Positions 24,017-64,000 of a stretch of 64,000 nucleotides of DNA are shown piece after piece. The DNA is from Octopus bimaculoides. Its lineage: Eukaryota. A program made the position numbers and the translations under genes. Every line of letters starts with the position of its first letter. Within the stretch, counting starts at the first letter, position 1. The notes beneath the pieces are model-generated. The model made no database searches. It had not been told where the DNA came from and saw nothing but the letters and a program-made list of their open reading frames with translations. The stretch is from positions 2,923,234-2,987,233 of the forward strand of contig NC_068987.1 in assembly GCF_001194135.2 (NCBI RefSeq), in the 5' to 3' direction.

Positions 24017-24415
24017 AATCGTAATGACCAGTACCGGCCAATCGACATGTACAACGATAACCGTAGCTACACTGATTACGAAGACAGTATATATCCTGAC
24101 CGCAATCAGTTTTTTCTGGATGGTGAAAGCGTCAACCAGTCTGTTGTATCGTCTCTGCGTGGTATTAGCCGAGATAGCTTCTGTATGTCTACTGCACACA
24201 TAGCTGAAGACCCCCTGGAACTTCTGGAGTGTGGGGGAATTAACGATGAAGAACAAGAATCATATTATCCTGAAGTGGAACCCGTCCAGCGCACTGTTGA
24301 TTCAGCAGGTGCCGTGTCTGTTGACACACAGGACAGTGGACTTTTTAAAGACTCTCCACTTCCTTGTGGAAATATACAATTTTGGTCCGAGTCTATGGAC
24401 CCAACAGATTTCCAA
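24017..24415 (+). CDS. TRP channel exon: acidic N-terminal region ending in the G-x-I-x-F motif (NRNDQY...[17 protein letters not shown])
   Basis: Acceptor (T)n-GCAG at 24016, 399 nt open, donor GTAAGT at 24416; phase 0-0. Confidence 0.85.
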
Positions 24416-27208: not shown

Positions 27209-27249
<41 letters not shown>

Positions 27250-30200: not shown

Positions 30201-33200
30201 CACAGGGCTTCGACCATTTAAGAGAGAGTATGTCTTGCCCAGAGGTTTCCAACCCTTTTCTAATATCCAGGTCAGATCCAAAACCTGAATTTTTTTTTGA
30301 GGGGTGGGGTAGGGCTCCAAACTCCAGAAAAGGTAAAACACAATCAATTAAAGACAAATTGATTATATTTACAGAGGGATGACTGTTGGGGGCCAATGGA
30401 AGGATGCTTGAGGGCCACATGAGGCCACTGGAGCCACACCTGAGAACTGCTGATCTTTAAAACATAGCGAGCTGGATCTAGAATGGGCAGGTGTGTAGCT
30501 TAGTGGTTAGGGTGTTGCACTTCCAATTGCAAGACCATGGTTTCAGTTCCCAGACTGGGCAGTGTGTTGTGTTCTTAAGCCAGACATCTCCTGTTGTTTC
30601 AGTCCACTCGGCTGTAAATGAGGAACCCTGTCTCAGATTGGCATCCCATTCAGGGCCAACGTTGGGATTCGAGTCTCTTTTATGCCATGGAAATCTGGGT
30701 GACCATCGTTATGAAAGAATAATGTCCAGAGGCTGGACACGATGATGATATGTCCAGAACCACATTATTTAAGGTGTCCTTCATTTTTCAGTCAAGAAGG
30801 TGTGATTTAAAATAAGATTTGGTTGCTATGTCTAGCAGGTTGAGCAACCAGCCACAGGGGTTCTCTCATCTCTTGCAATTATAAGTAATTAGTGGTAATT
30901 ATTTTTAGTTCAGAGACNNNNNNNNNNNNNNNNNNNNNNNNNNNNNNNNNNNNNNNNNNNNNNNNNNNNNNNNNNNNNNNNNNNNNNNNNNNNNNNNNNN
31001 NNNNNNNNNNNNNNNNNNNNNNNNNNNNNNNNNNNNNNNNNNNNNNNNNNNNNNNNNNNNNNNNNNNNNNNNNNNNNNNNNNNNNNNNNNNNNNNNNNNN
31101 NNNNNNNNNNNNNNNNNNNNNNCTGCACCCTCCCACACACACCTCTGAATTGATGTCAGTGTATGTTTACGTAATTTACAGATGGTGATGGGAGTCTAAG
31201 GATAGATTCAGAGCTGGTGTCAACAGGTTCAATTCCTACCTAAGTGTTTAGTCAGCCATCTGAATAAATGTGTGGTGATTCTTCGGGAATGGTACGTTGG
31301 ACAAGACACAAGAAGGGTCAGAAGCAATAGAGGCAGGCTCTGGGGTTAGCGGATTCAGCTTACGATCGTAAGGTCGTGAGTTCAACGCCCGGTGACGTGT
31401 TGTCTCCAGTCCACTCAGCTGGCAAAAATGAGTGGTACCTGTATTTCAAAGGGGCCGGCCTTGTCACACTCTGTGTCACGCTGAATCTCCCTGAGAACTA
31501 CGTTAAGGGTGCACGTGTCTGTGGAGTACTCAGCCACTTGCATGTTAATCTCACGAGCAAGCTGTTCCATCAATCAGATCAACTAGAACACTTGTCATCG
31601 TAACTGACAGAGTACCAGTAACTGACAGAGTACTAGTAACTGACAGAGTACCATCAAATGTAAATAATGTACACAATTCCTCCTCTCTTAAATATAGAAC
31701 TGTATGACAGAGACTGTTTCTGGTGGGTGATGAGGTGACAGAAATGATGGTGGGGCTTGGGACTTTGTTAAATATACTACTTTAGGAAATCTGTAATACA
31801 ACAGTGAACTGTTAATTCTGTGGTACAGTAGTGAACTGTTAATTGTATGCCACTACAGTGAGCTGTTAACTATGTAGTACAACAGTGAACTATTCATTGT
31901 GAGATAGAGAAAGTGTTAATTGCGAGGTAAACTGAGTTAACAAGTCAGTTTACCTCGTCAATGAACTGTTAGTTGTGTTTCTTAATAGATTCCTTCTTTT
32001 ACTTTCAGTCCAAGAAGCATTATGTTTGTGTCCCAACCGATACTTCTGTGGAAGATCTGGCAGATTTTATGGGCCTTTTCTGGCGGATGCGCAGTCCTAA
32101 AATTGTGCTCTCAGTTGTCTCAGGAATCAAGCATTTTAAAGGCTGGAAAAACCCCAAACTCAAAGAACAATTTCAAAAGGGAATTATCAAAGTAAGTAAA
32201 TTTATGTTGTAGAACTTTTTTCTGAGTAAGCGAGTTGTCGAGGGACAGGTCCCACGATTTTTGCAGTCATCTCACCCTGGTGAGTTTGATATGACTGGTG
32301 TCCAGCCTGAAAATCTGTTGGTCACTGAAAAAGAAAAAAAACATGGATAGAGAGGGAACCAAGGTTTGATGTGAAAGATATAGAGTGAACTGTACTAAAG
32401 ATGTATAAGACCAGGTCAGGGTGTTAAACAGGGTGGTGTGTTATATCTACCACTTATGTATGCAGAAGATGGCTTCTGTGAATATCACTATTTCATTAGG
32501 GTTATAGTAAGTCCATTTGCATTTGGTTGACCTTCATATTTCTCACTGCTAAAACATCAGACAGACATGGAACTTGTTGTCAGCTGATCAGACTGTGATC
32601 TGTCTGGAAACTATGCAATTATTTAAGCCAAGAATCCATTTTTATCCAGTTGTTAGTAGAACTGAGAGAATCAAACTGTTGTATTTCTGTAGTTACATTT
32701 GTATTGGCACAGAAGAGATGGAAAGCAAAAATCAACTCAGATGGGATTTGAACTCATATTCTGATGCAGCTAAGCAAAAAAATCCTGTTGGCTCAACATA
32801 CAAATTGTTCTGCCAAATCTTTGTTGTTGGTTTAGACAACATTACCAAAAATAAGTAAAGATTATTCTCCAAAGTGGTTCAGTGATAAAAGTGGTGGAAT
32901 GGGAGATGGTGTGCATTGACATTTTGTTCTGATCTTTTGTAGTTCAGGGTAAATTTGTGGGTGTGAAGGAGGGGGGAATGGATGAAGGGATAAACATTTT
33001 GAGAGTTAAGGGAATACAATTTGGGGTTAGATAATGTTGGGAGGTGTGTAAGAATTGGTGATAATGGGGTTCTGGGAGAGATAATGGGTTTAAGCGGAGT
33101 TAGTGAACAGGGATGAGAACCAATGGGAATGAGATCATTTTAGTGAGGGTAAATGGTTTATGAGTGGCTTATCAAAGGGATGACAGTTTTTTGAAGAACT

Positions 33201-35608
33201 TACAGAACGTCAGTGTGTGTGTGTGTGTGTGCATGCATGTGTGTGTATGTGTTTAGTGGGGAAACTGCTCCAAATATGCAAATATATTCCATGGTAGGGA
33301 AAACTTGTATCATATAAAGGGTCTGAAAGGGATTATGGGTAAAATGATTTCAGGCCCTGAAAAAGAAATGATATATAAATGGTGGTCATGATAGGTTGTC
33401 TTACATTGTATGGTCCATTGTATACTGTGTGGTAGAGAGTATGGTAGTACACTGTTTGGAGTATGGTACATTTAATGGGATATCATACATTGTATGAAGT
33501 GGTGCACATTGTGTGATGTGTCGTATACTGTAATGAGTGTCTTATATTGCATGGAGTGTGGTATATTGTTTGAGGTATCATATGCTGTATGGACTATCAC
33601 ACATTGGAGTATCAATCATTGTATGGAGTATGGTATATTGTATGGCACATAGTATGGAGTGTTGTATAGCTTACATTGAGGTGTTTGATATTTTTGAATA
33701 GTAAAAGTATAGAATGGTGGTTCTGTTTTACAAGAATAATCTGTGTTTTGGTTGAATGAGACAAAGATATGAAGCCATGGAATTCATGAACATCTGCTGA
33801 GAAGTTTTATTGTTATAGGTTGAGGAGGGGGGTGTATAGAAGAGGAAAGGGGAATTTCAGTGCGCTGCCTCTTCTAATACAAACAAACTGAGTGATGAGG
33901 AAATGTATGTTATCTCTGCAGCTAAATTAAGGTAAATCTCTCTGAATGATTATAAGATTATAACAGAATGTGTATTTATGGTAGATTTACAATATTTATA
34001 CCTGCACATTGTTTCAGGTGTTTTCATGTATGATCAGCATCAAGTGTCTTGCTCATCGAGGAATGTTGACAGCCAAAGCAGATGTTTCATGAAACACATA
34101 TGAGCATCAACAAAAGCGGTGGGAGCTGGCAGAAACATTAGCACGCCATGCGAAATGCTTAGCGGTATTTCATCTGTCTTTATGTTCTGAGTTCAAATTC
34201 CACCGAGATCAACTTTGCCTTTCATCCTTTAGGAGTCGATAAATTACATGCTAACAGCGCAGTGCTCCAACATGGCTGCAGCTCTGAGCTGAAACTACAA
34301 AAAGAAAACAAAAAATTCAAAGGCAGAACATTAAAATTGAGAAATAGTTGTACAATATCCAGTATTATGGTTCTATATTTAAGAGATGCGGAATTATTTA
34401 TATTATTTACATTATTTACATTTGAGGGATATTTGTCCTCATCTTGTTTGTTGTTAACACAATGTTTCAGCTGATATACCCTCCAGCCTTCATCAGGTTC
34501 GAAATTTCTGCAAGACACCTGATGAAGGTTGGAGGGTATATCAGCTGAAACGTGTTAACAACAAACAAGATGAGGACAAATATCCCTCAAATGTAAATAA
34601 TGTAAATAATATCCAGCATTGTTGTAGATGCTGTGTTGCTTAGTGAACTGGTTTATTTATGATCCATGTTCTGCATGAAGAAGATGAGAATCAAATGAGA
34701 ACACCCATCACCTGAAAAGAACAAAAGAATATCTATAGCGCTTTGACTAAATTCCAGAATACACCCCGTAAAAGTTATTTGAATAATTTGGATATTAAAA
34801 ATCTTTGATCAATATTTATGAAACAATGTATAGCATATCAAAAGTAAGATTTAATTAACCGTAACCAAGAATAAATCACTCTATCTTATTTATCTTGTTG
34901 TAAAATGGATGAACATCAAAACTTTTCCTTGAAAATAGATTCTTTATGATAATTCTGATGAAAGCAATATTTTTAAAATCTTCAAAGAAAATCTTTGAGA
35001 AACCAATTCTGTTGTTGTTGTTCTCATGTTTCCTTTTTTTTTTTTCTTTCTCTACCCCCCCACACCACACCACCACCAATTCCAGGCTGCAAACACTACA
35101 GAACTTTGGATAATAACAAATGGCGTTGATGGTGGTATTGCCAAGACAATTGGTGATGCCATTCATGAAGAGAAAATCCACAGAATTAGTAACCGTGTCC
35201 AACAGGCATATGCATCAATTCATGCAGAACAATGCCATCGTTTACCCAAACTAACTGTGATTGGAATAATGCCAAAACATTGTATTTCCTATGAGAGTTC
35301 CTTTGATGGTTTGGTAAGAAGTCTTTTGAAATTCCCTTTTTGCTTAATTTCTTTTCTCATTTATCTTTTACTTGTTTCAGTCATTAGACTGTGGCCATGC
35401 TTGGGCACCACCTTGGAGGAATTTTAGTCAAACTAACCAACCCCAGCATTTGGAGTGGTTGGAGTTTGGAAGGGCATCCAGTTGTAGAAACACTGCCAGA
35501 TCAGATTGGAGCCTGGTGCAGCTGCTGGCTCTCCAGACCTCAGTCAAACCGTCCAACCCATGCCAGCATGGAAAACAGACGTTAAACGATGATGATGATG
35601 ATGACATA

Positions 35609-38600: not shown

Positions 38601-38844
38601 AATTTCAAAAACATTCCCCGATGACTTCAAAGAGAACGATATTGCCAGAAATGCATTTCGTGACAAGATTTTAGAATGTGTCAAATATTCTCAAGAGGTT
38701 GGTAAGTTAGGCATAAATTGTTGCAAAGATAACCAAATTCACTTTAGCATTACTTGTCACTAATTACTGTCTCTAATGAGTTTACTAATTAGTTGTATAA
38801 TGATAACAATAGCAATAATATTAATAATAATAAATATTATTGTA

Positions 38845-38876
<32 letters not shown>

Positions 38877-40010: not shown

Positions 40011-41534
40011 TTTTTGATGTTCATTCATTTATACTTTTATTTTTTTTCATGCTAGCATAGGTTAGAGGAATATATTATTACTTCAGTAGATTTCTAGCTT
40101 GGTTGAGTTAGGGTATTCTATAATCCTGTTCATTTGACTATTTCTCAAATTGTGTTCAAGTACAACCAAAAGTACCACTAAGCATTTTTTTTGAGACGTT
40201 CAATATTAAAGAACAAAAACATTTTAAGGCTACTCTCTTATACGTTTGATGTACTAGCTTCATTTAAAATTTGCTAGTAACCTATTTTTTGCATGTTGTT
40301 TATGTTCTGAATCTATTTTTGTGTCATTCTAACTTCTTCACGTGTGTGACACCTGATATACATAATTTTCTCTATTAACTAATTGTTTAATTTTCAAAGA
40401 AAACTGAATCACAATTCATTTCTATTCTTTTCATTTTCTTTGTTATTTTCTTCAGACAAGATTTCATTATCATTAAGAAGAAAGTTTTTCTTCTCTCAAG
40501 TTTTTGTTGTTTTACGTTAAGTTTTCTTTGTCAGTAATTTGTTTTCTTTCACATTTTCACAGAGTATTTGGGAATTTTCATCTGAAATTATTATTTCTTA
40601 CCCATTACACAATAGTTATAGAGTGGGATAAAGGTCCATAGCTTAGTGGTTAGGATATTCAGGTCAGAATTGTAAGGTTGTGATTTCAATTCCTGGTGGC
40701 ACATTAGATCCTTGGGTTAAACACTTTATTTCTCAGCTGGAAAAAATGAGTTGTACCTGTAATTCAAAGGGGTCACTCTTGTCACATTCTGTGTCATACT
40801 GAATCTCTGTGAAAACTATGCTAAGAGTATATGTGTCTGTGGAGTACTCAACCACTTGCATGTTAATTACGTGAGCAAGCTCTTATGTTGATCAGATCAA
40901 CTAGAACACTCAGAGTCGTAGTGCCAGTTTCTCCTACACTGCAACACAAAGTCACTCTCTACATCATGGCCCATGTCTCTAAATGTGATTCTTGTGTTTC
41001 TTTGACCCAAGGGGACTAACACACAAATAGACAGTCAGATCTTAGTCTGACAATTTCATCCTGGGTTTCTGTTCGGTTTTGAAATTTAAAAGAAAAGAAA
41101 ACACTGCTGTAGTTTTCGCTTCTTTCACTTCGGATGGTTTCTTTTAAATGTCCTGGCGATCTTGTTGCCCTGCTTTACATGAGGAGAAATTTCAGGGAGA
41201 ATATCAGAGTGAGATAAGGGAAAATGGGCATAATATTGTCAAAAAGAGAGAGAACAATGGGGTAACATTTGCATAACACTGGGGTAAAATTAGGGCAACA
41301 TAGTAGAGTACGATGTGCAATATTGTTCTATTGCTGTTCCATATTTTAACCAATGACCTTTGTTCTATATGTTTGCCCTCTCCATTAAACTTTAACCTTT
41401 AATCTCTCTGTCCCTAGGGCGAACAAACATTCCTTACCTTTGTCAACACAAAAGGATGGGATTCCAACCTGAAAGACCTTGATAAATATATTCTGAAGGC
41501 TTTATTCCGATGTAAGTACACAGCTTCTTATGAG

Positions 41535-51900: not shown

Positions 51901-52404
51901 AGGGATCAATCTAATTGACTGGCCCCCTCCCCCAAAATTTCAGGCCTTGTGCCTAGAATAGAAAAGAAGCTTTTCTATTTCTCCCTTGTCTTCAAATAAA
52001 ATTATTTTAAGGCAGATCTAAATAACAACAGAACACTTCATGAAGAGTGTCACTCAGTACTTTGAGTGTCACTCAATGCTTTGAATAAAGTCAAGAGTGT
52101 CATTCAGTGCTTTGAATAAGGTCAAACTCATTGATCTCATTTTTTAATATTATGAATTCTTTTATTCTTTTACTTGTTTCAGTCATTTGACTGTGACCAT
52201 GCTGGAGCACCGCTTTTAGTCGAACAAATCGACCCCAGGACTTATTCTTTGTAAGTCCGGTACTTATTCTATCAGTCTCTTTTTGCCGAACCATTAAGAA
52301 ATGTGAACGTAAACACACCAACATTGGCTGTCAAGCGATGGTGGGGGACAAACACAGACACACAAATACATACATACATATATATATACACATATACGAC
52401 ATAT

Positions 52405-52446
<42 letters not shown>

Positions 52447-55400
52447 CCTCTTATTCATTTATATGTTTCAACTTTGAGGCTGATTTACGCTTTCGCCACC
52501 ACAACCCCATTTAGGCTTAGCAGCCCTTCCTGTTTGTTTTCACTGTTCTGTGTGTGTTACCAATTTTGACCCTCCACAAAAACCCAAATTTTATTTAATT
52601 TGCTTTGGGGGAGCAGCAACTGTTTTATCGAAAGCGTATATTGTTGTTAAATGCTTGAAATACGAGAGTAGAAAAACAGCCAACAACTGGTGAAGGGTTG
52701 TTCTTTATATTGTTTGTTATGTTTTCCATTTGTGTCTTTCGTTGTTCGAAAGAATAGTTCATGTTCCATGTACTCATGCTTCGTACTTTTTTGTTGTACA
52801 TGTTTCGTAACGTCCTGTGCCAACATACGCATATAAATATACATATAGATGTAAGTATGTACATATACATANNNNNNNNNNNNNNNNNNNNNNNNNNNNN
52901 NNNNNNNNNNNNNNNNNNNNNNNNNNNNNNNNNNNNNNNNNNNNNNNNNNNNNNNNNNNNNNNNNNNNNNNNNNNNNNNNNNNNNNNNNNNNNNNNNNNN
53001 NNNNNNNNNNNNNNNNNNNNNNNNNNNNNNNNNNNNNNNNNNNNNNNNNNNNNNNNNNNNNNNNNNNNNNNNNNNNNNNNNNNNNNNNNNNNNNNNNNNN
53101 NNNNNNNNNNNNNNNNNNNNNNNNNNNNNNNNNNNNNNNNNNNNNNNNNNNNNNNNNNNNNNNNNNNNNNNNNNNNNNNNNNNNNNNNNNNNNNNNNNNN
53201 NNNNNNNNNNNNNNNNNNNNNNNNNNNNNNNNNNNNNNNNNNNNNNNNNNNNNNNNNNNNNNNNNNNNNNNNNNNNNNNNNNNNNNNNNNNNNNNNNNNN
53301 NNNNNNNNNNNNNNNNNNNNNNNNNNNNNNNNNNNNNNNNNNNNNNNNNNNNNNNNNNNNNNNNNNNNNNNNNNNNNNNNNNNNNNNNNNNNNNNNNNNN
53401 NNNNNNNNNNNNNNNNNNNNNNNNNNNNNNNNNNNNNNNNNNNNNNNNNNNNNNNNCCTACCCAGTCCTTAATGTTTCCTATTGTTCCTAAACGGTTCTC
53501 TTTGACATTCCATATTCAAACGCTTCCAGACAACTGCAATGTTATGTCAGTTGAGGTTCGCTTAGTTTGACCAAAGGTCAGACAACTGTGAGGTGCTTGC
53601 GTTATGAAGTGTGATGTTGTCTGGCAGAGAGAAAAGGTTATCAGATGATTTGCAAAGATTGAGAAATAAAAGAGGCAACCAGGCTCCATTGGATGTGCAA
53701 AGTCAGTAAGAAGCCTAAAGATGAAATGGTGAAATCTGATCCCAGAACGTTGAGCCCCACAAAAGGAGGCGTCAGGGGTCGGTGACGAATGGCAACATGC
53801 AATATTATAGAAGACCAACCCCAGCTCTCATCTAAACCACACTGAAATGGTGTTAATGGTGGAGACTGGGAAGTATATAAATATATATCTCAACCCCTAA
53901 TCTTGCTCTGTTAATTCTACTTCTTCCACCTGCCCCCTCCACTTCCTGATACCTTAATCACCTCTCTACCTTCTCTCTATCTCTCACCCTTTTTTATAGC
54001 CACTGCCACACTTTCTGTAGGGTTTATATGGAACTTGTCCAAGCTTCTTGTCTCACTGACTCTCACCCACTCTCCACTCACTGGGCCATGCCACCTACGT
54101 AACAAAGGACAACACTGGACATGCCTCTACCCACAACCCTCTTCTCATAACACCCAAGCATCACCCTTTTTAGGCTAACAATCAATATCTCTTACCTTCC
54201 CCTTTCTCGCTCTCTTATCTGACTGCTCAGTCTCTACTACCATACACTTGTTCCCTTCAACCACATATTTAGATTTTTTTCTCCATTTATTTCCAGAATG
54301 GGAAACGGTCCGTAGGTGCCAGGTTGAGAACAGCTTTGAGAAGGAAACGCAAATTGAAATTGCCATTTTGGAGGCAGATTTATCTGTTGTGGAATTCCCC
54401 AATCACCAAATTTTGGATGACTCAGGTAAATATTCTTTCTGTCTCTTAGAGCTTTTAATGTAATTCATTCTCCACATTTTTGGTTATAGTAGAAGACACT
54501 TGCCCAAGGTGCCACACAGTGGGACTGAACCTGGAACCTTGTGGTGGGTAAGCAAGCTACTTACCCCACAGCCATATCATTTATAAAAGTTTTAAGCAGA
54601 ATGGTCAGCTTTCTGGACAAAAGACCACCAAGCATTTTGTCCAACTTTATGTTCTGAGTTCAATTTCTACTGTTGTCAGCTTTGCCTTTCATCCTTTCTG
54701 GAATCGATGTAACTGACCAGTCCTCTCCCCCAAAACTTCAGGCCCTGTACCTACTGTAGATAGGATTATTTATAAAAAAATCTTTCACTGGTGTCAGACA
54801 ACTATAAAATACTATTTTATTTTATGATACGATTTTATGATATAACTAACTAAACTATGATAAGTCATATGACAATGACATAGGTTTGTGTAAACATGTG
54901 ATGTAGATTTGAAACCTGTGTGTCACTCAAGAAAACAGAGTTGAACCACAGAAGATCTTGGTTTAAATAACAAACTGGTATATGTCAAGTACCCTAATAG
55001 AAATGGCCCATTTGGAACGGTATTCCTTGCAATATTTCAAAGACTTTCCCTTTTCATTTGCAGGTGTTTTACTTCATCTACCTCGGTATCTTTAGTTTGG
55101 CTGTGCTGTGGCCCACCTGTGGAAATATATTGCTAGACCTTATTGTTTGGTTATGGACGCTGGTTATAGTCACAGAAATTGCTCGACGAACATATATAAA
55201 ACATCAGGTATCTACTCTCTCTCTCACTCTCTTTTACGCATGCACACAAACACACACACACACGTTCACGTACACATGCACACACCATCATATGCCATGT
55301 ATACATATATACATCATTTATATCATTATTATAAATCTATATACAAGGTGGTGCTGAAAAGTTCCTGGCTTTCGGTAAAAGAAATACCCCTTATTTTTCG

Positions 55401-55878: not shown

Positions 55879-57072
55879 GTTGTTGTTGTTATTATAATAT
55901 TTTTTTTTCCCCATTCAGAAATACAAAGCATTATCATTACTTGGACACTGTGTGGAGATTATCTTAATATTGGTGTTCTTAATACTCTACCTGATTTTGC
56001 GGATTATTCCAAACTGGGTGAATTTCTCCGATTTTATCACAGCGAAGATTGTCATGGCTATTGGTTTGATTTATTTTTTCTATCGTCTGCTTGGTGTATA
56101 CCTGCCTATTAGTCCAACGCTCGGACCGAATTTAGTACGTATTGTCAGAATGGTAAGTTCTAGCTTTTATCTTTTACTTGTTTCATTCATTAGACTGCGA
56201 CCATGCTGGGGCACCATCTTGAAGAATTTTAGTCAAACTAATTAACCCTAGTGCTCATTGTTTTTTTAAAGCCTGGTACTTACTCTATCAGTCTCTTTTG
56301 CCGAACCACTAGGTTATGGGGATGTAAGCACATCAACATTGTCAAATAGTGGTAGGGGACAAAAACAGACGGACAAAACACTCACACGCACCAAATCCAC
56401 TCACAAGGCTTTCTTCAGCCTGGGGCTATAAGTAGAAGATACTTGCCCAAGGTGGCACACAGTGAAACTGAACCTGGAACTGAACTATGTGGTTGGGAAG
56501 CAAGCTTCTTACCACACAGCCACTTTATACTTTTGAAGTCTATTGGTCAATTTAGCTAAACCGTTAAGTTATGGGGATGTAAACAACCCAACAACAGTTG
56601 TCAAACTGTGTGGGATGGGGTGAAGAATACAGACACAAAGACACTCAAACATAGACATAATTATATGACAGGCTTCCACACAGTTTCCATCTACTAAATC
56701 AGCTCAGAAAGTATTGGTCAGCCTAGGGCTGATATATATTAGATCATCCCATAAATAATGCAGGTTTTTTTGCAATTGCATGAACTAAAAGTTGGAGGGA
56801 GATGGATTAAACTACCTGCATCAACTTGCTATAAAAGCTGTTAGTAATTTTACCTTGTACTTATTCTTAGTGCAAGTTTTTGAAGAGTGCAGTTCGATTT
56901 TAACAGTTATTTTTTCAAAGCTATAATGGAAGTGACAAAGGGGCATATTTGGCATATTTTGCTGTATGAGTTCAATTATTTTTTCAGATATATAATACTG
57001 TACCAAGGACTTTCTATTTCTAATTCTACTTACTTGCATATACTATTATTGTTATTATTATCATTATTGTTA

Positions 57073-57198: not shown

Positions 57199-57253
<55 letters not shown>

Positions 57254-60200
57254 CATTATTATCATTATTCATGTATCAACATATATCGCACATCACACTT
57301 GTAAGTTTGTTTTTTAATTTATATTGTTACACATTGTTATATATTGTACATTTGTCAGTGTTACATTGATAAACCAACCAGGACCTTAGGGAGCTGGTTA
57401 GTTTTTTTCTCCATCTGTTGCCATTTAGGGGCTAATCTGGGATTTATTTAACCTAACGTGCCCCTCAATTTTTGCTTAAAAAGGCAGACAAGGGTTGTTT
57501 GTCCACTGGAAAAAAAACAGCCAAATTGTAAAAGTCAGTGACAGCAGCAACAACAACAACAACAACAGCCACAACAACAACAATAGAACACGTGAAATGT
57601 ATGGAAGTAAATTTCCATTGCTTCCAGTATTACCTTCACCATTGCAGGAACAACAAATGAAATCAATGACAACAAAAAAACAACACCAACAAGAACACTG
57701 CCTCCTCCACCACCACTGCCAATGGCAACAGCAAACTTCCTCCTCCTCACTTACCACCAATATTTTCTTTTAATCCTTTAGTCTTTTAATCTTTTAATCC
57801 TTAAACTGTTTGTCTTTTTTAGGTGAAGCATGATTTTGTGGCCTTCATCAGGATGTTCTTGATATTCCTCTTAGCTGGTGGTGTGACCACACAAGCCGTC
57901 CTCTACCCAAACTATCCTCTTGGCACCCAAATGTTAAAAAATGTCTTGACACGTCCACTCTTTGCCTTATTTTTAACACAAATTCAGGATTTAGATGGTA
58001 AATACCTTCTGCTTCTCTATTTCAATAATATATTCTGTCCTAGAAACATTAGCACGACGGGCAAAATGCTTAATGGTATTTCATCTGTCCTTACATTCTG
58101 AATTCAAATTCTGCTGAGGTCGACTTTGCTTTCCATCCTTTCGGGGTTGATAAATTAAGTACCAATTGTGTATTGGGATCGATCTAATTGACTGGTCGCC
58201 TTCCCAAAAATTTCGGGCCTTGTGCCTAGAGTAGAAAAAAATATTTCTTCTGTTTAAGGTGGTGAGCTGGCAGAAACATTATCACGCCGGGTAAAATGCT
58301 TAGCGGTATTTTGTCTGTCTTTACATTCTAAGTTCAAATTCCACCAAGGTCTGATTCACCAGTTCCTCTGATCCACCAGAATCTCTGTTCTCCAGTCCCT
58401 CTTGTTCACCAGTCCCTCTTGTTCACCAGTTCCTCTTGTTCACCAGCCCTTCTTGTTCACCAATGCCCCTTGTTCACCAGTCCCTCTTGTTCACCAATCC
58501 CTCTTGTTCACCAGCCCCTCTTGTTCACCAGCTCCTCATGCTCACCAGTTTCTCTTGTTCACCAGCTCCTCTTGTTCACCGGTCCCTCTTGTTCACCAGT
58601 TCCTCTTGTTCACCAGTTCCCCTTGTTCACCAGTCCCTCTTTGTTCACCAGTCCCTCTTGTTCACCAGACCCTCTTGTTCACCAGTTCCTCTTGTTCACC
58701 AGTTCCTATTGTTCACCAGTCCCTCCTGTTCACCAGTCCCTCTTGTTCACCAGTCGCTCTTGTTCACCAGTTCCTCTTGTTCACCAATCCCTCTTGTTCA
58801 CCAGTCCATCTTGTTCACCAGTTCCTCTTGTTCACCATCTCTTGTTGAACTGTCATAAAGTGTTATTTTGGGAATTTTATATCTGGAAAGCAAAAATGTC
58901 TCTCTAGGGCTCAGCTGTGATGCTTACTCAGCTATTCAGTGATTCAGTTTCATATCTGCTACAGAACCATCCGACTCTTGCCAGTATACAAGAACAAATG
59001 TTAACTGACAATGTTTATAATGTAACGATATGAAGTACACATTGATCAGGGATTCATTAAATGAAATGTGTATTAATTACATGAAATGTAACTACTTTAT
59101 ATTGATTGGTTCAATGTTAAATTTACCAAATGGAGACGTCCAACATAAGTGACACGACTGTCAATCCCATCTTTATCTCTAATGCCATAACTGTTTCTAT
59201 TTCCAGGTTTTAAAGACTGCACTCCTTTGTACAAAAATATTTCGCCAAGTTATTGCACTACAAGTAAGTAAAACATTGACTCTTTTGATACCAACCTGAC
59301 TGAAACTGCCTCTGGCTCTGTAGAACAAATGTCTTGTTTCCATAAGTTCTGAATTAAAATCTTCCACCAGACCTTAATCACAATTTATGTTCCTAACACT
59401 AGCTGAATGATAACTAAGTTATTTTACTAAATTCTTTATTATATTCAAAATTAATTGAAAGAAACACAGAGCTTCTCAAAAGAAATATGGTAATAAAAGG
59501 GTTAAATATTTCTAGTTAATAGTGTTTCTTAAAAGAATTGGATGGCAATTTTGGCAAAACAACTGAGAAAATATCTTGCTGCTGTAGTTACAGTTCTATA
59601 CATTCTGAGTTCAAATCTTGCCCATAGCAGCTTTAACATTTATTCTGCCATAAAATTTGCATCAGTAACAATTCAACTGAGAAAATAAAGTACCAGTGAA
59701 ATACTGGGGTCATTGATATCAGTTTAGTCCCTCCCCTCAAAATTTCTGGCCTTGTGCCTAAAAGCAAAGACCATTATTACAGAAGTGTGTGTGTAAGTAA
59801 ATACATATAGATGTTCCACACTTATAGACACCCATGTTTGCGTACATACATATGCACATGCACACACACACACACACACACTCACACTAATTCATGCATT
59901 GTATATACTCACACATAAATTATTCTATGACTTTAAAACTCTTTTATATTCCATTTCAGGAAAAACATCTTCGCCATTTGTTTCAGGTGAGAATACTTTT
60001 GTTTGTAAATTCAGGTGAAACATTTTATTTTCTTGTGGGATATTTTATCTTGTGTCATAATTAGATCTTCATTATCTTTTAGTATTGGTTTGCATTGATG
60101 AAGAGGGTGGGATTTGGATACCCTGCAGGATGAAGAGCAAGAGTCTTCAAAATCAATAGCCTTTCAAGTACATTGTGTGTGTGTGTGTATAAAATATTCT

Positions 60201-61505
60201 ATAATTATATGCATAATTATATTCAGGGGTCAGCTAAGTGCCTCACCACGTACTGAATTAGAAATACCATTTTTATGGTAGTTGAAAAGACATTAGCATC
60301 TATTTCTAATTCAGTACGTGGCAAGGTACTTAGCTGACCCCTGATTATAATTATGCATATAATTATAGAATATTTTGTATAATTCACCTAAAAAGGTTTT
60401 TTTAACGTACTGACTACTTGGTAAAATTATTAATTATTAATTAATTAATTGATTAATTTTACCCTATATTATTATATATGTATATAAGTATAGAAATGTG
60501 TCCGCATGAATGGTGGTGCACTTGCTTTTAATGATTCTGCAAAGAAAGAGGCTTGGAGATGCCATTATGAAAGACTGCTGGACGTGGAGAATGAACGAGA
60601 GGAGGAGAGTTTGCCAAACGTTGACCCAATTGAGGGACCAGCTACCCAAATCAACAGTACCCTGGTAGATAAAGCAATGAAGGACATGAAGACGGGGAAA
60701 GCCCCCGGCCCATCAGGAATCGCCGCTGAGATGCTTAAAATATCTGGCAGTGTGGGTTATGGTCTAGTCATCCCATATTGTAAATCAGGTTTTATGAAGG
60801 GGACAGGATTGGGGAGTGGGAAGTATGTTTAGTGCAAGAAACAGAAATGTGAAGTAGCGATGTAGTTTGGTTTGTTGTGGTCGAGTGTGAGAGGAATTTT
60901 CTTGTTAAGTTTGGGTGTCTGCTCAGCATTATGTTTGTTTTGTTTTTTTTCTCTATTCCAGATGCAGGAATTGCTGCTGTTGCTACATGTCCATATTCCA
61001 GTCTCGGGGGTTATATCGTTGTGTTGCAATATCTCATTATATGCAAGTTAATTCTTACGACAATTTTATTTGCAATGTTTGCGTAAGTAAATACAACCTT
61101 TAGTTTTATTGTGTTTGTGGTTGTGATTGTTGTTGTTGTATTGGGATCTGATGGGAACAGGAGGTGAGTAGGGGATGCAACATCATCATTCTCATCATCA
61201 TCATCATCATCATTATTATCATCATTATCACTAGTATTACTACAACCACCACCACCACCTCCATCATAACTGCTATTAAAGCCACTGCCACCATCTTCGC
61301 AGCCATTCAACAAAAACGCGTACAAATACCAAACGAAATGGTTCTTGACATTTTGTGATTTCATTGCTTCACACTATCAGCAATGCCTGGACCAGAATGG
61401 TTATCAGTTTGGAAACAAGCAGTCATAAAAATTAAATTGTCTGTAGAAATTTTGAAAAATCATCACCACCACCACCACCACCAGCACCACCACCACCATC
61501 ACCAC

Positions 61506-61556
<51 letters not shown>

Positions 61557-64000
61557 TTAGCATTCGTTTTCCATGCTGGCATGAGTTGAATGGTTTGTCA
61601 GGAGCTGTACCAAGTCCCATTGTCGGTTGTGGCATGGTTTCTACAGCTGGATGCCTTTCCTAACACCAACCATTTTACAGAGTGGCACTGGGTGTTTTTT
61701 TACGTGGTACCAGCAAGGGTGCTCTATATGTGACACCAACATGGGTCCCTTTTTTTGTGACACCAGCATGGGTGCTTTTTGTGTGGCACCAGCACGTAGT
61801 ATTAGAAATAAATAACAATTTGTTCTGATTCTCTAAAAGAAACTTTAATAATTTTTCAGATTAACAATTAGCAAAGTTGATAATGAAGCATCTTCCATAT
61901 GGAAATTTCAGCGCTATGCTTTAGTTGTTGACTTTGAAGAACGGCTCTGTTTCCCACCGCCTCTTACCTTCTTAAGTTATTTTGCAATGCTTATCCGGCT
62001 TATTTACCGCAAAATGAAGAAATGTAAAAGAAATTGTGAATTCTTCTGCAAATGTTGGAAGAAATCAGCTTTGGTACGTTACGTTTTCCATTTGCAAGTT
62101 TTACTAATCCTCTTTAACACTGATAATGCTAATGGTAATTAATTCTAATTCCTAATTAATATTTGATAATAATCACCCAAATTTATTAATGCTTAATTCA
62201 AACAACTGATTATAACTAATTAGTCATTCCATTTAATATTAATCACTGTTGTTAATTAACACTACTAATTAACATTTCTGAATATCTTTAAATTAATTAT
62301 GTTCACACACACACATCTTTGTGTATGTATGTATATATATATATATNNNNNNNNNNTATGTGTGTGTATATTTGTATATGTATATGTATATATATATGCG
62401 TGTATATATATATAGATAGATATATGTGTGTGTGTGTGTATCACTCTTTCACTCTTTTACTTGTTTTGGTCATTTGACTGCAGCCATGCTGGAACATCGC
62501 CTTTTAGTCGAACAAATCGAACCCATGACATATTCTTTGTAAGCCCTGTACTTATTCTATCAGTGTATTTTGACGAACCGCTAAGTTACGGGAATGTAAA
62601 CACACGAACATCGGGTGTTAAAGTGATGGCGAGGTTGGGCTGAGGGGTAAACTCAGACACAAACACACATACGTGAACACACACACATATATATTATGCA
62701 TAATAAAAAAGAATTTAATTAAGTACATCGTCTCTTTCTGATTGAGTCTTCAATCGATTACTTCAAAGAATTGACAGTCAGTTTTAAATTTGGTGCCGGT
62801 CTCTGTGGATAATGAATTCTCTTTGATAGTCTCTGGTTTTGAGATGAGTCGGTAGATTTATCCAGTTGAACATAAAATATACTATTCAACTTTCCTTCTT
62901 TTTTTTTTCTTTTTTTTTGTTGTTTTGTCTGATTTTAATCTATTCCCACCTCTCTTCTCACCTGAGGATTCCAGTTTGGACCTCAGTCTTCTGTTGACAG
63001 CCTAATTGCACCACTGACAAATTCTGATTAACCAATTATAATCACAGCTACTTCTATATTGAACTTTTGGTATTCCTGCTTTAAACGTTCATACAAGGCT
63101 GAAACCTGTGGAAGAGGGAAACCCAGAAAGACAATGGCAATATGCTGACCAATCTATAAAACTCCACCACAACATTTAATTCCTTGTAGTAAAGATTGTT
63201 TGCCAACATAACATGGCAGTCCTGGTTTAGGATGAATGTTGCTGTAACTTAGCCCCAGGAGACATTGTCTCCAGCTGGCTTTAGGACACGATCTGTGTCC
63301 TTATATTTTCGAACAAGGGAATCTAGCACCCCCACTCAGTCCTAAACCAGGACTGCCATGTTATGTTGGCAAATAATCTTTATTCCAAAGTACTGTTACT
63401 GAATATCTCTTGTTGTGAGATTTACAAATAGTACTTAATTCCTTGTTGTTCAAGTTTGGAATTATGGTCTCACTAGGTTTATCTTTTGTGATTCAAACCT
63501 CCAAAATTGATCCCAAAAAATCCTTCATTACTCGCAACTGATTTGTGATAAAATCAAACATTTTACTCAAACCACCCTTTTCCTATTCTGTGTGTCAAAC
63601 ATGATACACAGGACTTATTTCTCTGGTGTCCATATATCATATCGGATACACCTTCTCAGCTTCCTTTCAACCCCCAAATTAAATTGGGACTTATGAAAGG
63701 AAAGCTTTATATCGCTCGTGGCTAAAAGTCTAAAAACAAACATGGATGTCTAGGACAAGTTTATAAAAATGCTTTGGACAGGCAAAGGGTGAACCATGTT
63801 GTCTGGGTTTAACTCTTCTCCCTGGTCTCTGACTGCCTTTAGTGAAGCTCATTCTGCTTAGAAGTTTAGAATAAATCCTTGTTCTTGTCCTGTTCTTGTT
63901 GTTGATGTTAAACATGAAGGTTTCTCCATTTTTTTTTTCTCAGCCCGAAGCTTCTTCTTCGTCCCATCGAGCTAGTCAGCGTCTCAAAAGATCAGAAGAT
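24017..64000 (+). CDS. ced-11: TRPM-superfamily cation channel gene (TRPM/TRPS, CED-11-like); multi-exon, runs off the 3' end of the window
   Basis: The exon chain was assembled by hand with canonical AG/GT sites and consistent phases; the only junction needing an extra exon or a weaker donor is after 51733. It encodes SLOG motifs ([38 protein letters not shown]), [43 protein letters not shown], six TM segments, LGP at the S4-S5 linker and the TRP box WKFQRY. TRPM-superfamily membership is secure. The ced-11/TRPS assignment rests on recalled CED-11 motifs and needs phylogenetic confirmation. Confidence 0.9.
26045..26390 (+). mobile_element. SINE family D; related copies at about 8190-8420, 9430-9690, 24755-25040, 27890-28170, 31345-31653, 40640-40925, 48905-49275
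   Basis: tRNA-like head (GCAATGGCCCAGTAGTTAG...GTTTCGATTCCC) and a shared body CCTTGTCAC..TGTGTCA.GCTGAATCTCCC...GTCTGTGGAGTGCTCAGCCAC. Confidence 0.82.
28470..28990. repeat. Long degenerate (CA)n tract; the window also has many (TA)n, (TG)n, (CT)n, (TTA)n, (CAT)n, (CTT)n and (TACA)n microsatellites
   Basis: Directly visible; these tracts explain most low-complexity ORFs in the track. Confidence 0.95.
28998..29758. other. Assembly gap; other large gaps at 16780-17189, 42497-43459, 45834-46282, 49827-50376 and 52872-53456
   Basis: Runs of N. Confidence 1.
29759..30020 (-). mobile_element. Young RTE-LINE 3' UTR copy bordering an assembly gap
   Basis: Reverse complement of the 50377 copy; both give the [30 protein letters not shown] pseudo-ORF. 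Confidence 0.8.
31798..31905. repeat. 27-bp degenerate tandem repeat, 4 copies
   Basis: ACAACAGTGAACTGTTAATT-like units at 31798, 31825, 31852 and 31879. Confidence 0.75.
32009..32191 (+). CDS. TRP channel exon, SLOG domain start ([12 protein letters not shown]...[15 protein letters not shown]...GIIK)
   Basis: tttcag acceptor, GTAAGT donor, 183 nt, phase 0-0; TRPM MHR1 motifs. Confidence 0.95.
35086..35313 (+). CDS. TRP channel exon, SLOG ([25 protein letters not shown]...VIGIMP...FDGL)
   Basis: ttccag acceptor, GTAAGA donor, 228 nt, phase 0-0. Confidence 0.95.
36473..36677 (+). CDS. TRP channel exon, SLOG (YDGPIVIK...[13 protein letters not shown]...FRCLLEYRL)
   Basis: ttccag acceptor, GTAAGT donor, 205 nt, phase 0-1. 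Confidence 0.95.
37029..37224 (+). CDS. TRP channel exon, SLOG end ([14 protein letters not shown]...[17 protein letters not shown])
   Basis: tttcag acceptor, AG|GTAACA donor, 196 nt, phase 1-2. Confidence 0.95.
38550..38697 (+). CDS. TRP channel exon ([14 protein letters not shown]...[11 protein letters not shown])
   Basis: tcacag acceptor. The frame-preserving donor is GAG|GTTGGT at 38698; a competing GTAAGT lies 4 nt downstream. 148 nt, phase 2-0. Confidence 0.85.
38875..39410 (+). mobile_element. RLE-type non-LTR retrotransposon 3' fragment (R4/Dong-like) in an (AAT)n tract
   Basis: [15 protein letters not shown]...[11 protein letters not shown]...KPDIVLIEK...IIDIACP...PITVGALG...[10 protein letters not shown] is a PD-(D/E)xK restriction-like endonuclease end; the fragment is flanked by TAA repeats. 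Confidence 0.88.
39428..39660 (+). mobile_element. Decayed 3' end of another RLE-type LINE
   Basis: [17 protein letters not shown]...[14 protein letters not shown], flanked by (AAT)/(GAT) repeats. Confidence 0.6.
41418..41511 (+). CDS. TRP channel exon ([31 protein letters not shown])
   Basis: ccctag acceptor, GTAAGT donor, 94 nt, phase 0-1; resembles the TRPM D-x-x-I-L-x-A-L motif. Not listed in the ORF track. Confidence 0.92.
42121..42248 (+). CDS. TRP channel exon ([43 protein letters not shown])
   Basis: ttgaag acceptor, GTAACA donor, 128 nt, phase 1-0; matches the TRPM hallmark L-x-L-A-L-x-WNR-x-D-I-A-x-x-x-IF. Confidence 0.93.
43587..43778 (+). CDS. TRP channel exon ([42 protein letters not shown]...GKNF)
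   Basis: tttcag acceptor, GTAAGT donor, 192 nt, phase 0-0; corresponds to the TRPM DR-x-x-FV-x-L-L-x-x-x-G motif. Confidence 0.93.
44362..44520 (+). CDS. TRP channel exon ([25 protein letters not shown]...AERK)
   Basis: gtccag acceptor, AAG|GTTCGC donor, 159 nt, phase 0-0. Confidence 0.88.
45354..45532 (+). CDS. TRP channel exon, MHR4 ([39 protein letters not shown]...)
   Basis: ttacag acceptor, AG|GTCAGG donor, 179 nt, phase 0-2; TRPM WAVL-x-x-R motif. Confidence 0.95.
46687..46759. repeat. 30-bp near-perfect hairpin with a 13-nt loop
   Basis: ATATAATTGCCAACTAAGTGTGGCGTCCTA / TAGGACGCCACACTTGGTTGGCAATTATAT; the single mismatch is a G-U wobble on the plus strand. Confidence 0.9.
48253..48484 (+). 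mobile_element. SINE family B, nested in the head of a family A SINE; other copies at about 26500-26690, 34120-34250, 39715-39895, 51770-51968, 58045-58350, 59570-59770
   Basis: GGCGGCGAGC...GTTCTGAGTTCAAATTCC followed by the conserved block GACTTTGCCTTTCATCCTTT..GGGTCGAT, which resembles the recalled Meta-type SINE core. Confidence 0.8.
50377..50680 (+). mobile_element. Young RTE-LINE 3' UTR/tail copy bordering an assembly gap
   Basis: Near-identical to 29759-30020 (minus), 42453-42496 and 2791-2935; ends GGACGTTAAACGATGATGAT. Confidence 0.8.
50809..51061 (+). CDS. TRP channel exon, MHR4 ([11 protein letters not shown]...[17 protein letters not shown]...PYWFK)
   Basis: gtttag acceptor, AAG|GTTTGT donor, 253 nt, phase 2-0; FIAH-x-C-x-Q motif. 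Confidence 0.95.
51631..51733 (+). CDS. TRP channel exon, pre-S1 hydrophobic segment ([19 protein letters not shown]...KVDIYLR)
   Basis: ttccag acceptor and a strong AG|GTAAAT donor at 51734 (phase 1). A weaker phase-0 donor AAA|GTAGAT at 51715 is an alternative. Confidence 0.8.
53530..53555 (+). CDS. Candidate 26-nt microexon (D-NCNVMSVE) linking the phase-1 donor at 51734 to the phase-0 exon at 54297
   Basis: Pyrimidine-rich tract ending cttccag, 26 nt open, donor GAG|GTTCGC (the same hexamer as the donor at 44521). It was the only phase 1-0 AG/GT cassette I found in the sequenced part of this interval. The missing exon could instead lie in the N gap 52872-53456. Confidence 0.4.
53560..53810 (+). 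mobile_element. Highly decayed RTE LINE fragment
   Basis: RLHWMCKVS-like segment similar to the element at 13811. Confidence 0.45.
54297..54425 (+). CDS. TRP channel exon, pre-S1 ([43 protein letters not shown])
   Basis: ttccag acceptor, CAG|GTAAAT donor, 129 nt, phase 0-0. The homologous frame carries the S/A-P-I-T/V-K-F-W motif and differs from the frame in the ORF track (54248). Confidence 0.93.
55064..55207 (+). CDS. TRP channel exon, S1-S2 ([48 protein letters not shown])
   Basis: ttgcag acceptor, CAG|GTATCT donor, 144 nt, phase 0-0. Confidence 0.95.
55342..55385 (+). mobile_element. Mariner-type TIR remnant
   Basis: TA-CAAGGTGGTGCTGAAAAGTTCCTGGCTTT resembles a recalled mariner terminal repeat; no partner end is seen. 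Confidence 0.5.
55386..55847 (-). mobile_element. Second copy of the R4/Dong-like RLE fragment
   Basis: Same sequence family and same 5' junction as the 38875 copy; its 3' UTR is replaced by a mariner TIR remnant. Confidence 0.88.
55919..56152 (+). CDS. TRP channel exon, S3-S4 and S4-S5 linker (...[26 protein letters not shown])
   Basis: attcag acceptor, ATG|GTAAGT donor, 234 nt, phase 0-0. Confidence 0.95.
57823..57997 (+). CDS. TRP channel exon, S5, pore helix and filter ([12 protein letters not shown]...QAVLYP...[16 protein letters not shown])
   Basis: ttttag acceptor, G|GTAAAT donor, 175 nt, phase 0-1. Confidence 0.95.
58385..58845. repeat. 17-bp minisatellite, about 25 copies (TCTTGTTCACCAGTYCC)
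   Basis: Directly visible tandem array in the intron after the pore-helix exon. Confidence 0.95.
59207..59263 (+). CDS. TRP channel 57-nt outer-pore-loop exon ([19 protein letters not shown])
   Basis: ttccag acceptor, GTAAGT donor, phase 1-1, open frame with two Cys. Confidence 0.85.
59276..59505. mobile_element. piggyBac-type non-autonomous MITE; a second, partial copy in opposite orientation at 27410-27601
   Basis: Both copies end AAAGGGTTAA (GGG terminus plus TTAA target). The left end TTGACTCTTTTGATACC is a decayed TTAACCC terminus. Confidence 0.65.
59960..59986 (+). CDS. TRP channel 27-nt outer-pore-loop microexon (RKTSSPFVS)
   Basis: cttttatattccatttcag acceptor, CAG|GTGAGA donor, phase 1-1, open. 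It is not required for frame, so support comes from splice signals only. Confidence 0.65.
60188..60381. repeat. Foldback: about 79-bp inverted arms with a 34-nt spacer (MITE-like, TA ends)
   Basis: Arms 60188-60266 and 60301-60381 differ by about 4 substitutions plus a 2-nt terminal indel. Confidence 0.9.
60503..60790 (+). mobile_element. LINE (RTE-like) fragment upstream of the RT domain
   Basis: ORF 60506: [13 protein letters not shown]...[18 protein letters not shown]; KAPG-x-x-G-I-x-x-E-x-L-K is a non-LTR retrotransposon motif. Confidence 0.85.
60962..61082 (+). CDS. TRP channel exon, pore-loop end and S6 ([41 protein letters not shown])
   Basis: ttccag acceptor, GTAAGT donor, 121 nt, phase 1-2; the S6 end AMF is conserved. 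Confidence 0.95.
61860..62073 (+). CDS. TRP channel exon, TRP domain ([30 protein letters not shown]...CKCWKKSAL)
   Basis: tttcag acceptor, TTG|GTACGT donor, 214 nt, phase 2-0; TRP box WKFQR followed by PPP. Not listed in the ORF track. Confidence 0.96.
63190..63382. repeat. 43-bp inverted repeat enclosing two small hairpins
   Basis: Arms 63190-63232 and 63340-63382 differ at one position; internal hairpins GGAGACA-T-TGTCTCC and AGGACAC-GATCT-GTGTCCT. Confidence 0.9.
63944..64000 (+). CDS. TRP channel exon, C-terminal region, truncated by window end ([19 protein letters not shown])
   Basis: (T)n-ctcag acceptor, phase 0, open to the window end. Confidence 0.7.

What the first reader, a model, noticed from the sequence alone, without database searches (positions are those of the whole stretch)
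24017..64000. Probable TRPS (soromelastatin/CED-11) channel with a glycine-less, non-canonical pore filter
Seen: TRPM architecture, but the pore reads [17 protein letters not shown] where TRPMs have a Gly-containing filter (FGE, FGQ, YGE). S1-S2 reads [17 protein letters not shown] and the S4-S5 linker [18 protein letters not shown]. Recalled, not searched: C. elegans CED-11 has similar LPGCG...D...W.W and YIPLS..FGPMIVRV segments and also lacks the filter Gly. Established: TRPS is the sister family of TRPM, lost in vertebrates and insects, and CED-11 acts in apoptotic cell shrinkage. Inference: this is a cephalopod member of a family whose gating and selectivity are barely characterised, and it is easily mis-annotated as TRPM2/3-like.
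Basis: partly seen in the sequence, partly recalled or inferred. Interest (0 to 1): 0.75.

Follow-up and report, generated by a model that had tools for sequence, protein, structure and literature searches.

The report
Octopus TRPS channel gene, glycine-less pore
This is most of the Octopus bimaculoides gene for a TRPS (CED-11-like) ion channel, already published as TRPS though still labelled "TRPM2" by NCBI, and its glycine-less pore is real, shared by the whole family, and functionally unstudied.

Summary
All three quoted motifs are on the + strand at the stated places, and the protein has TRPM-type architecture.

The spliced model is 100% identical, wherever aligned, to O. bimaculoides XP_052825070.1. 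NCBI names that protein "TRPM member 2", but Morini et al. 2026 list this accession as TRPS. An octopus orthologue was TRPS bait in Himmel et al. 2020. The family assignment is therefore correct but already known.

The six N gaps flagged by the program are intronic and leave the frame intact. A seventh gap (52872-53456) probably hides a 92-nt linker exon, which both public gene models patch with artefacts.

About 30 TRPS-type proteins from seven animal lineages were read and none has the filter Gly. Every TRPM comparator has [F/Y]-G-[E/Q]. Two S6 changes go with it: the conserved Asn is Thr in every TRPS read, and the gate Ile is Phe/Tyr in all but one. Pfam Ion_trans does not recognise the TRPS membrane domain.

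No paper I could search states this explicitly. CED-11 itself could not be retrieved, transcript reads were unavailable, and conduction remains inferred.

The parts
13357..13386 (+). Alternative first coding exon (MKPSPNKDKE, the X2-type 5' end); ATG at 13357, donor GAG|gtaagc, phase 0, splices to E1
24017..24415 (+). E1, N-terminal region; starts at acceptor ttttttgcag|AAT. The internal Met at 24047 is the start of the shortest isoform
32009..32191 (+). E2, start of the SLOG/MHR1 domain
35086..35313 (+). E3, SLOG domain ([13 protein letters not shown]...)
36473..36677 (+). E4, SLOG domain; ends in phase 1
37029..37224 (+). E5, SLOG domain ([12 protein letters not shown]...)
38550..38697 (+). 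E6
41418..41511 (+). E7
42121..42248 (+). E8
43587..43778 (+). E9, TRPM2-like (MHR3/4) domain
44362..44520 (+). E10
45354..45532 (+). E11
50809..51061 (+). E12
51631..51733 (+). E13 (corrected end): ...[10 protein letters not shown] plus G, donor AGAG|gtaaat, phase 1
52872..53456 (.). N gap in intron 13 that most likely hides a 92-nt exon. In O. sinensis that exon encodes (E)EEIDEESGSDSSEDNRLPQSKSMLEKEFRR
54297..54425 (+). E14, pre-S1 segment
55064..55207 (+). E15, S1-S2 with the TRPS-invariant P-x-C-G and W
55919..56152 (+). E16, S3, S4 and the S4-S5 linker ([18 protein letters not shown])
57823..57997 (+). E17, S5, pore helix and filter; ends GAT G|gtaaat in phase 1
57970..57978 (+). Filter triplet F-L-T, aligned to TRPM [F/Y]-G-[E/Q]. 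Leu (57973-57975) takes the place of the Gly
59207..59263 (+). E17a, 57-nt micro-exon [19 protein letters not shown]. It carries the two conserved pore-loop Cys and an N-x-S site, and is the same size as the Tegillarca micro-exon
59960..59986 (+). E17b, 27-nt micro-exon R-KTSSPFVS-(D)
60962..61082 (+). E18, S6. Thr at 61060-61062 replaces the group-I TRP Asn and Phe at 61069-61071 replaces the TRPM gate Ile
61860..62073 (+). E19, TRP helix (IWKFQRY) and Cys-rich tail
63944..64000 (+). E20, [19 protein letters not shown], cut by the window end. The coiled coil and NUDT9H domain lie beyond

Best explanation
The window holds most of the Octopus bimaculoides TRPS (soromelastatin, CED-11-like) gene. 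At least 23 coding exons on the + strand run from 13357 to past 64000.

The protein has a SLOG/MHR N-terminus, S1-S6, a TRP helix and, beyond the window, a coiled coil and a NUDT9-homology domain.

Its pore differs from every TRPM at three pore-lining hallmark sites:
- the filter reads F-L-T where TRPMs read [F/Y]-G-[E/Q];
- the S6 Asn is Thr;
- the S6 gate Ile is Phe.

The first two changes hold in every TRPS-type protein read and the third in all but one, so this is an ancient, selected pore design, not a local defect.

Inferred, not shown: the protein forms a tetrameric cation channel. Its outer filter would be lined by Thr/Gln and backbone atoms beneath a conserved acidic D-L-D/E ring and a disulfide-braced, glycosylated loop. 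An aromatic hydrophobic gate would sit in S6. Opening would be driven from the cytosolic SLOG/NUDT9H domains by a nucleotide-type ligand. Selectivity and gating are expected to differ from TRPM2-like channels.
For: Identity:
- The model is 100% identical to XP_052825070.1 in all aligned columns, and that accession is listed as TRPS in Morini 2026 Table S1.
- The closest non-cephalopod relative is Pecten XP_033743506 at 58-60% identity, also listed as TRPS.
- A TRPS profile scores family members at 1457-2125 bits, against 377 bits for the Salpingoeca TRPM2-like protein.

Pore:
- Gly aligns to Leu against nvTRPM2, TRPM3 and TRPM5 structures.
- No filter Gly in about 30 TRPS-type proteins from molluscs, chelicerates, a millipede, a priapulid, tardigrades, amphioxus and an acanthocephalan.
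- All TRPM comparators have [F/Y]-G-[E/Q] with LNLLIAMF.
- R1029 is invariant, and F1032, F1035 and the two loop Cys are at least 90% conserved across 19 TRPS.
- Filter and S6 are identical in all nine cephalopod sequences, including intron-free contigs of about 6 kb.
- Ion_trans hits mollusc TRPMs but not octopus TRPS.
- Tegillarca shares the exon structure around the pore.

Conduction, indirect only: a drug-evoked inward current in Brugia muscle is reported to involve CED-11 (PMC9734116).
Against: - Splicing rests on orthologue proteins and mRNA-like contigs from a related cephalopod.
- No nematode CED-11 sequence was retrieved, so the family's founding member was not checked for the pore signature.
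- I could not compute my own tree because the script machine was lost. Clade membership rests on published trees plus similarity.
- There is no structure, no tetramer model and no recording for any TRPS. Loss of three pore hallmarks could equally mean a poorly conducting or non-conducting pore.
- One exon is missing from the assembly, so the locus is not fully readable.
Confidence: 0.88

Rival explanations
1. It is a true beta-TRPM (TRPM2-like) channel, as NCBI names it, that has merely diverged fast.
For: NCBI names it TRPM member 2. It shares the SLOG, TRPM2-like and NUDT9H domains. The best solved-structure hit is Nematostella TRPM2.
Against: Identity is 32-60% to published TRPS members and at most about 27% to TRPMs. 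The accession sits in the TRPS clade of a published ML and Bayesian tree. The pore signature separates the two groups with no intermediates. Himmel 2020 tested and rejected long-branch attraction for this clade.
Confidence: 0.03
2. The odd pore is an assembly or annotation artefact, or the gene is decaying.
For: The assembly is full of gaps. One exon is missing, and both public models contain artefacts at that spot.
Against: The pore exons lie in clean sequence with canonical splice sites. Filter and S6 are identical in three octopod species and in mRNA-like contigs from another cephalopod. The motif is conserved across phyla. The spliced reading frame is open throughout.
Confidence: 0.02
3. 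TRPS subunits do not conduct on their own. With the filter Gly, S6 Asn and gate Ile all replaced, they may act as sensors, scaffolds or modulatory subunits of other channels.
For: Three pore-lining hallmarks are changed family-wide. Pfam Ion_trans fails on TRPS. No recording of any TRPS was found in the literature searches. In Brugia, CED-11 is implicated only together with TRP-2 and GON-2.
Against: The pore helix, filter, acidic ring and disulfide loop are among the best conserved segments of the protein, which is not expected of a dead pore. A hydrophobic aromatic gate and an acidic outer ring are typical of working cation channels (established knowledge).
Confidence: 0.15

Closest known systems
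TRPS / soromelastatin family (C. elegans CED-11 and relatives; Himmel et al. 2020; Morini et al. 2026)
   Same: This exact protein (XP_052825070) and its octopus orthologue (XP_029638531) are listed as TRPS. It has SLOG plus NUDT9H and no ankyrin repeats or kinase domain. Its relatives occur in molluscs, chelicerates, myriapods, priapulids, tardigrades and amphioxus, with none found in vertebrates or insects. The two pore-loop Cys that Morini noted are present.
   Different: Nothing separates it from the family. The family-wide Gly-less filter with the S6 Thr and aromatic gate is not spelled out in the papers I could search. CED-11 itself was not compared here.
Beta-TRPM channels such as TRPM2 (Nematostella TRPM2, PDB 6co7; human TRPM2)
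   Same: Overall architecture: SLOG/MHR, S1-S6, TRP box 1 (WKFQRY), coiled coil and NUDT9H. The D-L-[D/E]-G motif after the filter resembles LDEIQG or LDDLEG. Both have a disulfide-bearing pore loop.
   Different: About 25-30% identity only. The filter is F-L-T instead of Y/F-G-E/Q and is one residue shorter. S6 reads LTTILFAMF instead of LLNLLIAMF. Ion_trans does not hit. NUDT9H catalytic residues are reported lost in TRPS (Morini 2026).
Group-I TRP fingerprint (Cabezas-Bratesco et al. 2022)
   Same: It keeps the pre-S1/TRP-helix Trp, the S4-S5 linker Gly (LGP) and the aromatic residues around the pore helix.
   Different: It lacks the filter Gly, which is 86.3% conserved across group-I TRPs, and the S6 Asn of the N-L-I-A fingerprint.

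Membership tests
TRPS (soromelastatin) | Groups with CED-11-like proteins as a clade sister to all TRPMs | tested here: met
   The accession XP_052825070 and its closest relatives XP_033743506 and XP_029638531 are listed in the TRPS clade of Morini 2026. Similarity is clearly separated: 32-60% to TRPS against 27% or less to TRPM, and 1457-2125 bits against 377 bits. I could not compute my own tree.
The CED-11 paper is not held.
TRPS (soromelastatin) | N-terminal SLOG/melastatin domain | tested here: met
   PF18139 at 1.4e-43 on the window model and 4.8e-40 on P0052.
TRPS (soromelastatin) | C-terminal NUDT9-homology domain retained | tested here: met
   Precomputed PF25969 (NUDT9_N) on P0052, and a conserved GRTG...WGPNH...NTDNAW C-terminus in the alignment. 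This part lies outside the window.
TRPS (soromelastatin) | No ankyrin repeats and no alpha-kinase domain | tested here: met
   The Pfam scan of full-length P0052 returns only the SLOG and TRPM2-like domains.
TRPS (soromelastatin) | [quoted passage not shown] | tested here: inconclusive
   Box 1 (IWKFQRY) is present. The downstream segment differs from TRPM5 in the alignment, but I did not compare it against family consensus logos.
TRPS (soromelastatin) | Taxon distribution: protostomes and amphioxus, absent from vertebrates and insects | tested here: met
   The TRPS-type hits are molluscs, chelicerates, myriapods, a priapulid, tardigrades, amphioxus and an acanthocephalan. None is a vertebrate or insect.
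TRPM (melastatin) | Selectivity filter [F/Y]-G-[E/Q] after the pore helix | tested here: not met
   F-L-T at the aligned position, with no Gly between the pore helix and DLDG.
TRPM (melastatin) | S6 motif L-N-L-L-I-A-M-F (Asn and gate Ile) | tested here: not met
   The window has LTTILFAMF: Thr for Asn and Phe for Ile.
TRPM (melastatin) | Membrane domain recognised by Pfam Ion_trans | tested here: not met
   No PF00520 hit on P0052 or P0051, but hits on the mollusc TRPMs P0101 and P0117. The same pattern holds in the precomputed annotations.

The most novel reading that the evidence does not exclude
TRPS channels have a selectivity filter and gate built differently from every other group-I TRP channel. 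There is no filter glycine, the filter is one residue shorter, Thr replaces the S6 Asn, and the gate is usually aromatic. This could give them ion selectivity or gating unlike any TRPM. The octopus protein would then be a tractable full-length representative for the first structure and recordings of the family.
Probability: 0.45. Interest if true: 0.6.

Novelty: already known. Interest (0 to 1): 0.38.

Why it matters
TRPS is the only animal TRP family for which I found no solved structure and no published recording, and its one studied member acts in apoptotic cell shrinkage.

Showing that the family-wide pore lacks three residues treated as near-universal in group-I TRP channels turns a vague "divergent TRPM-like protein" into specific tests. 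These are reversion mutants at the filter Leu, the S6 Thr and the S6 Phe, ion-substitution recordings, and a tetramer structure.

On the practical side, the locus shows that public octopus gene models for this channel are wrong in the pre-S1 linker because of an assembly gap. It also shows that database names and a recent cephalopod TRP survey still miss the family.

Tried and rejected
- **Direct E17-to-E18 splice.** It is in frame and gave a pore loop of only about 10 residues. Orthologues showed two micro-exons in between, so I rejected it.
- **A "decayed" micro-exon at 58908-58964.** It has an acceptor, a split Gly, 57 nt, and ends TCT GCT ACA G like Tegillarca. I built a story of a stop codon, a lost donor and an 8-nt duplication. 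It was a chance resemblance: the real exon is at 59207-59263.
- **Direct E13(51714)-to-E14 splice.** Also in frame, but wrong. E13 runs to 51733 and a 92-nt exon is missing.
- **tblastn for extra exons.** Searching the introns, upstream and downstream with 31 homologues found nothing. It missed both micro-exons, so that negative result was not informative.
- **My own tree.** The script machine was lost, so there is no ML or NJ tree and no motif tabulation by script.
- **Third homology search with a Mytilus TRPM.** It returned only a Mytilus expansion: no octopus or vertebrate TRPMs.
- **CED-11.** Not found by any search, and Driscoll 2017 is not held.
- **Structure prediction.** No eligible TRPS under 1200 aa has an intact S1-S6; P0018 lacks S1-S4. 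I skipped it.
- **Exon 0 (MDNNGSPKSWTKLAFL).** Not found in the window.

Full report
**Observation.** A rough join of the open stretches hits Pfam SLOG-in-TRPM at 1.4e-43 and the TRPM2-like domain at 1e-24. Its best solved-structure match is Nematostella TRPM2 at 2e-64, followed by TRPM3, 7, 5, 2, 8 and 4. The TRPM-type architecture is therefore real. In that alignment the TRPM filter PYWQMYGEL lies against PLFALFLTQ, so Gly aligns to Leu.

**Gene model and gaps.** I mapped exons by tblastn with oyster and scallop relatives and read every junction. The spliced frame is open. All six gaps named by the program fall in introns: 28998-29758 and 30918-31122 in intron 1, 36767-36781 in intron 4, 42497-43459 in intron 8, and 45834-46282 and 49827-50376 in intron 11. 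The frame runs across them.

My first model contained three errors, which cephalopod orthologues exposed once a profile search found them:
- Two micro-exons lie between the filter exon and the S6 exon. E17a (59207-59263, 57 nt) encodes [19 protein letters not shown], and E17b (59960-59986, 27 nt) encodes R-KTSSPFVS. Both have canonical sites and matching phase.
- E13 runs to 51733, giving VDIYLR plus G in phase 1.
- A 92-nt exon follows, which O. sinensis reads as EEEIDEESGSDSSEDNRLPQSKSMLEKEFRR. It is absent from the readable window. It most likely sits in the 585-N gap at 52872-53456, which the program's note did not list.

An alternative first exon (MKPSPNKDKE) is at 13357-13386. A second first exon (MDNNGSPKSW...) is not in the window. 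E20 starts at 63944 and is cut by the window end. The coiled coil and the NUDT9-homology domain lie beyond.

**Identity.** The corrected model is 100% identical, in all aligned columns, to P0052. [quoted passage not shown] Morini et al. 2026 (PMC13143021) list exactly this accession as TRPS in their Table S1. They also list XP_029638531.1, a member of the same 90% cluster, and Pecten XP_033743506, which is my P0002 at 58-60% identity. Himmel et al. 2020 (PMC7306681), who defined TRPS, used an Octopus vulgaris sequence as one of three TRPS baits and report two TRPS paralogues in molluscs. The family assignment is therefore right, and it is already in the literature.

My own data agree. Identity is 32-60% to TRPS-type proteins and at most about 27% to TRPMs. 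A TRPS profile gives 1457-2125 bits to full-length family members, against 377 bits for the Salpingoeca TRPM2-like protein. I could not compute a tree because the script machine was lost.

Besides the NCBI name, a 2026 genome-wide survey of cephalopod TRP channels has no TRPS column (PMC13402157).

**The pore.** The equivalence of TRPM Gly and TRPS Leu is seen in several alignments: HMMER against nvTRPM2 and TRPM3 and TRPM5, MAFFT with two Mytilus TRPMs, and BLASTP with Aplysia and Patiria TRPMs. It is anchored on one side by the pore helix (R-P-x-F-x-x-F) and on the other by a D-L-[D/E]-G motif that beta-type TRPMs share. The TRPS filter is one residue shorter, and no Gly lies between the anchors, so the conclusion does not depend on the exact register.

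None of the roughly 30 TRPS-type proteins I read has the Gly:

| Lineage | Filter |
|---|---|
| Molluscs | F-[L/F]-T |
| Spiders, horseshoe crabs, tick, priapulid | [F/Y]-[L/I]-[T/A] |
| Millipede | F-L-S |
| Tardigrades | F-[T/I]-[A/S] |
| Amphioxus | W-L-T |
| Acanthocephalan | F-L-T |
| Three unnamed divergent members | F-T-T, F-L-N, F-R-T |

Every TRPM-type comparator has [F/Y]-G-[E/Q].

Two further sites change with it. The S6 Asn of the group-I TRP fingerprint is Thr in every TRPS. The TRPM gate Ile is Phe or Tyr in all but one (Ala in P0150). In octopus the motif is LTTILFAMF, against LLNLLIAMF in TRPMs.

The region is under constraint. R1029 is invariant, and F1032, F1035 and both loop Cys are at least 90% conserved over 19 TRPS proteins. 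The filter and S6 are identical in nine cephalopod sequences from at least four species. These include O. sinensis isoforms X1-X3, which differ only at the 5' end, and intron-free contigs of about 6 kb that look like mRNA. No second copy of the pore exon exists in the window. Tegillarca has the same exon layout: a filter exon ending in phase 1, a 57-nt loop micro-exon, and an S6 exon starting ten codons before the Cys. Pfam Ion_trans recognises mollusc TRPMs but not octopus TRPS, and the same split appears in the precomputed annotations.

**Prior description.**
- Himmel 2020 never uses the words pore or selectivity filter.
- Cabezas-Bratesco 2022 report the filter Gly as 86.3% conserved and "highly conserved in all subtypes". 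They do not remark on TRPS in the passages shown.
- A search for ced-11 plus "selectivity filter" returns only Morini 2026.

So the Gly-less filter and its S6 partners seem not to be stated explicitly, although they are visible in published alignments.

**Mechanism.**
- *Shown:* the gene, its family, the domain order, and the conserved non-canonical residues.
- *Inferred:* it forms a tetrameric cation channel. Thr/Gln and backbone atoms would line the filter under an acidic D-L-D ring. A disulfide-braced, N-glycosylated loop would form the outer mouth. An aromatic residue would form the S6 gate. The cytosolic SLOG and NUDT9H domains would drive opening. NUDT9H catalytic residues are reported lost in TRPS.

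The main live rival is that TRPS conducts poorly or not at all on its own. The strong conservation of the pore argues against that but does not exclude it.

**Verdict.** The gene and its family are already known. The residual value is a sharper, family-wide description of an unusual pore, plus corrections to the locus and to public gene models. Untested here: CED-11 itself, octopus transcripts, my own tree, and any structure.

Noticed in passing
window 51715-54296 (intron 13 with gap 52872-53456): Public O. bimaculoides models are wrong here. XP_052825070 fills the missing linker exon with intron read-through ([33 protein letters not shown]), and A0A0L8G0K9 skips to an internal acceptor in E14. 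O. sinensis, Argonauta and the Logan contigs show the true acidic, Ser-rich exon.
   Followed up: yes
window 38764-39135 (intron 6): A transposon-like ORF ([31 protein letters not shown]...) is included as coding sequence in the UniProt model A0A0L8G0K9, but not in any other cephalopod orthologue.
   Followed up: partly
window 58908-58964: A 57-nt stretch with a good acceptor, a split Gly codon and a Tegillarca-like 3' end mimics the pore-loop micro-exon, but it carries an in-frame TGA and has no donor. It is a chance look-alike; the real exon is at 59207-59263.
   Followed up: yes
L001 16401-16689 (Tegillarca granosa TRPS locus): The 3' part of the filter exon (TTTGCCATGTTTCT.ACA.AGAT...) occurs three times within 290 bp. 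The third copy has a stop codon. This is either a local tandem duplication in the intron or an assembly artefact.
   Followed up: no
P0130 (Pomphorhynchus laevis KAI0978967.1): An acanthocephalan protein has the full TRPS-type pore (FLAMFLTEKADLE and LMTMLYAMF). Himmel 2020 found no spiralian TRPS outside molluscs, so the family may be wider in Spiralia than reported.
   Followed up: partly
window 58355-58837; 51761-51958; 58000-58330; 60494-60829; 9773-10219: The introns are full of repeats: a 17-bp tandem array of 28 copies, several copies of a SINE-like element (motif GKMLNG...FAFHPF), and a reverse-transcriptase-like ORF fragment. Upstream of E1 there is an ORF that I only guess, without any search, could be a Tc1/mariner-type transposase N-terminus. 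No nested gene was seen on either strand.
   Followed up: partly
PMC13402157 (cephalopod TRP survey, 2026): Its repertoire table lists TRPA, C, M, V, ML, P and N but not TRPS, although its introduction names the family. The octopus, Argonauta and Logan sequences here show that TRPS is present in cephalopods.
   Followed up: partly
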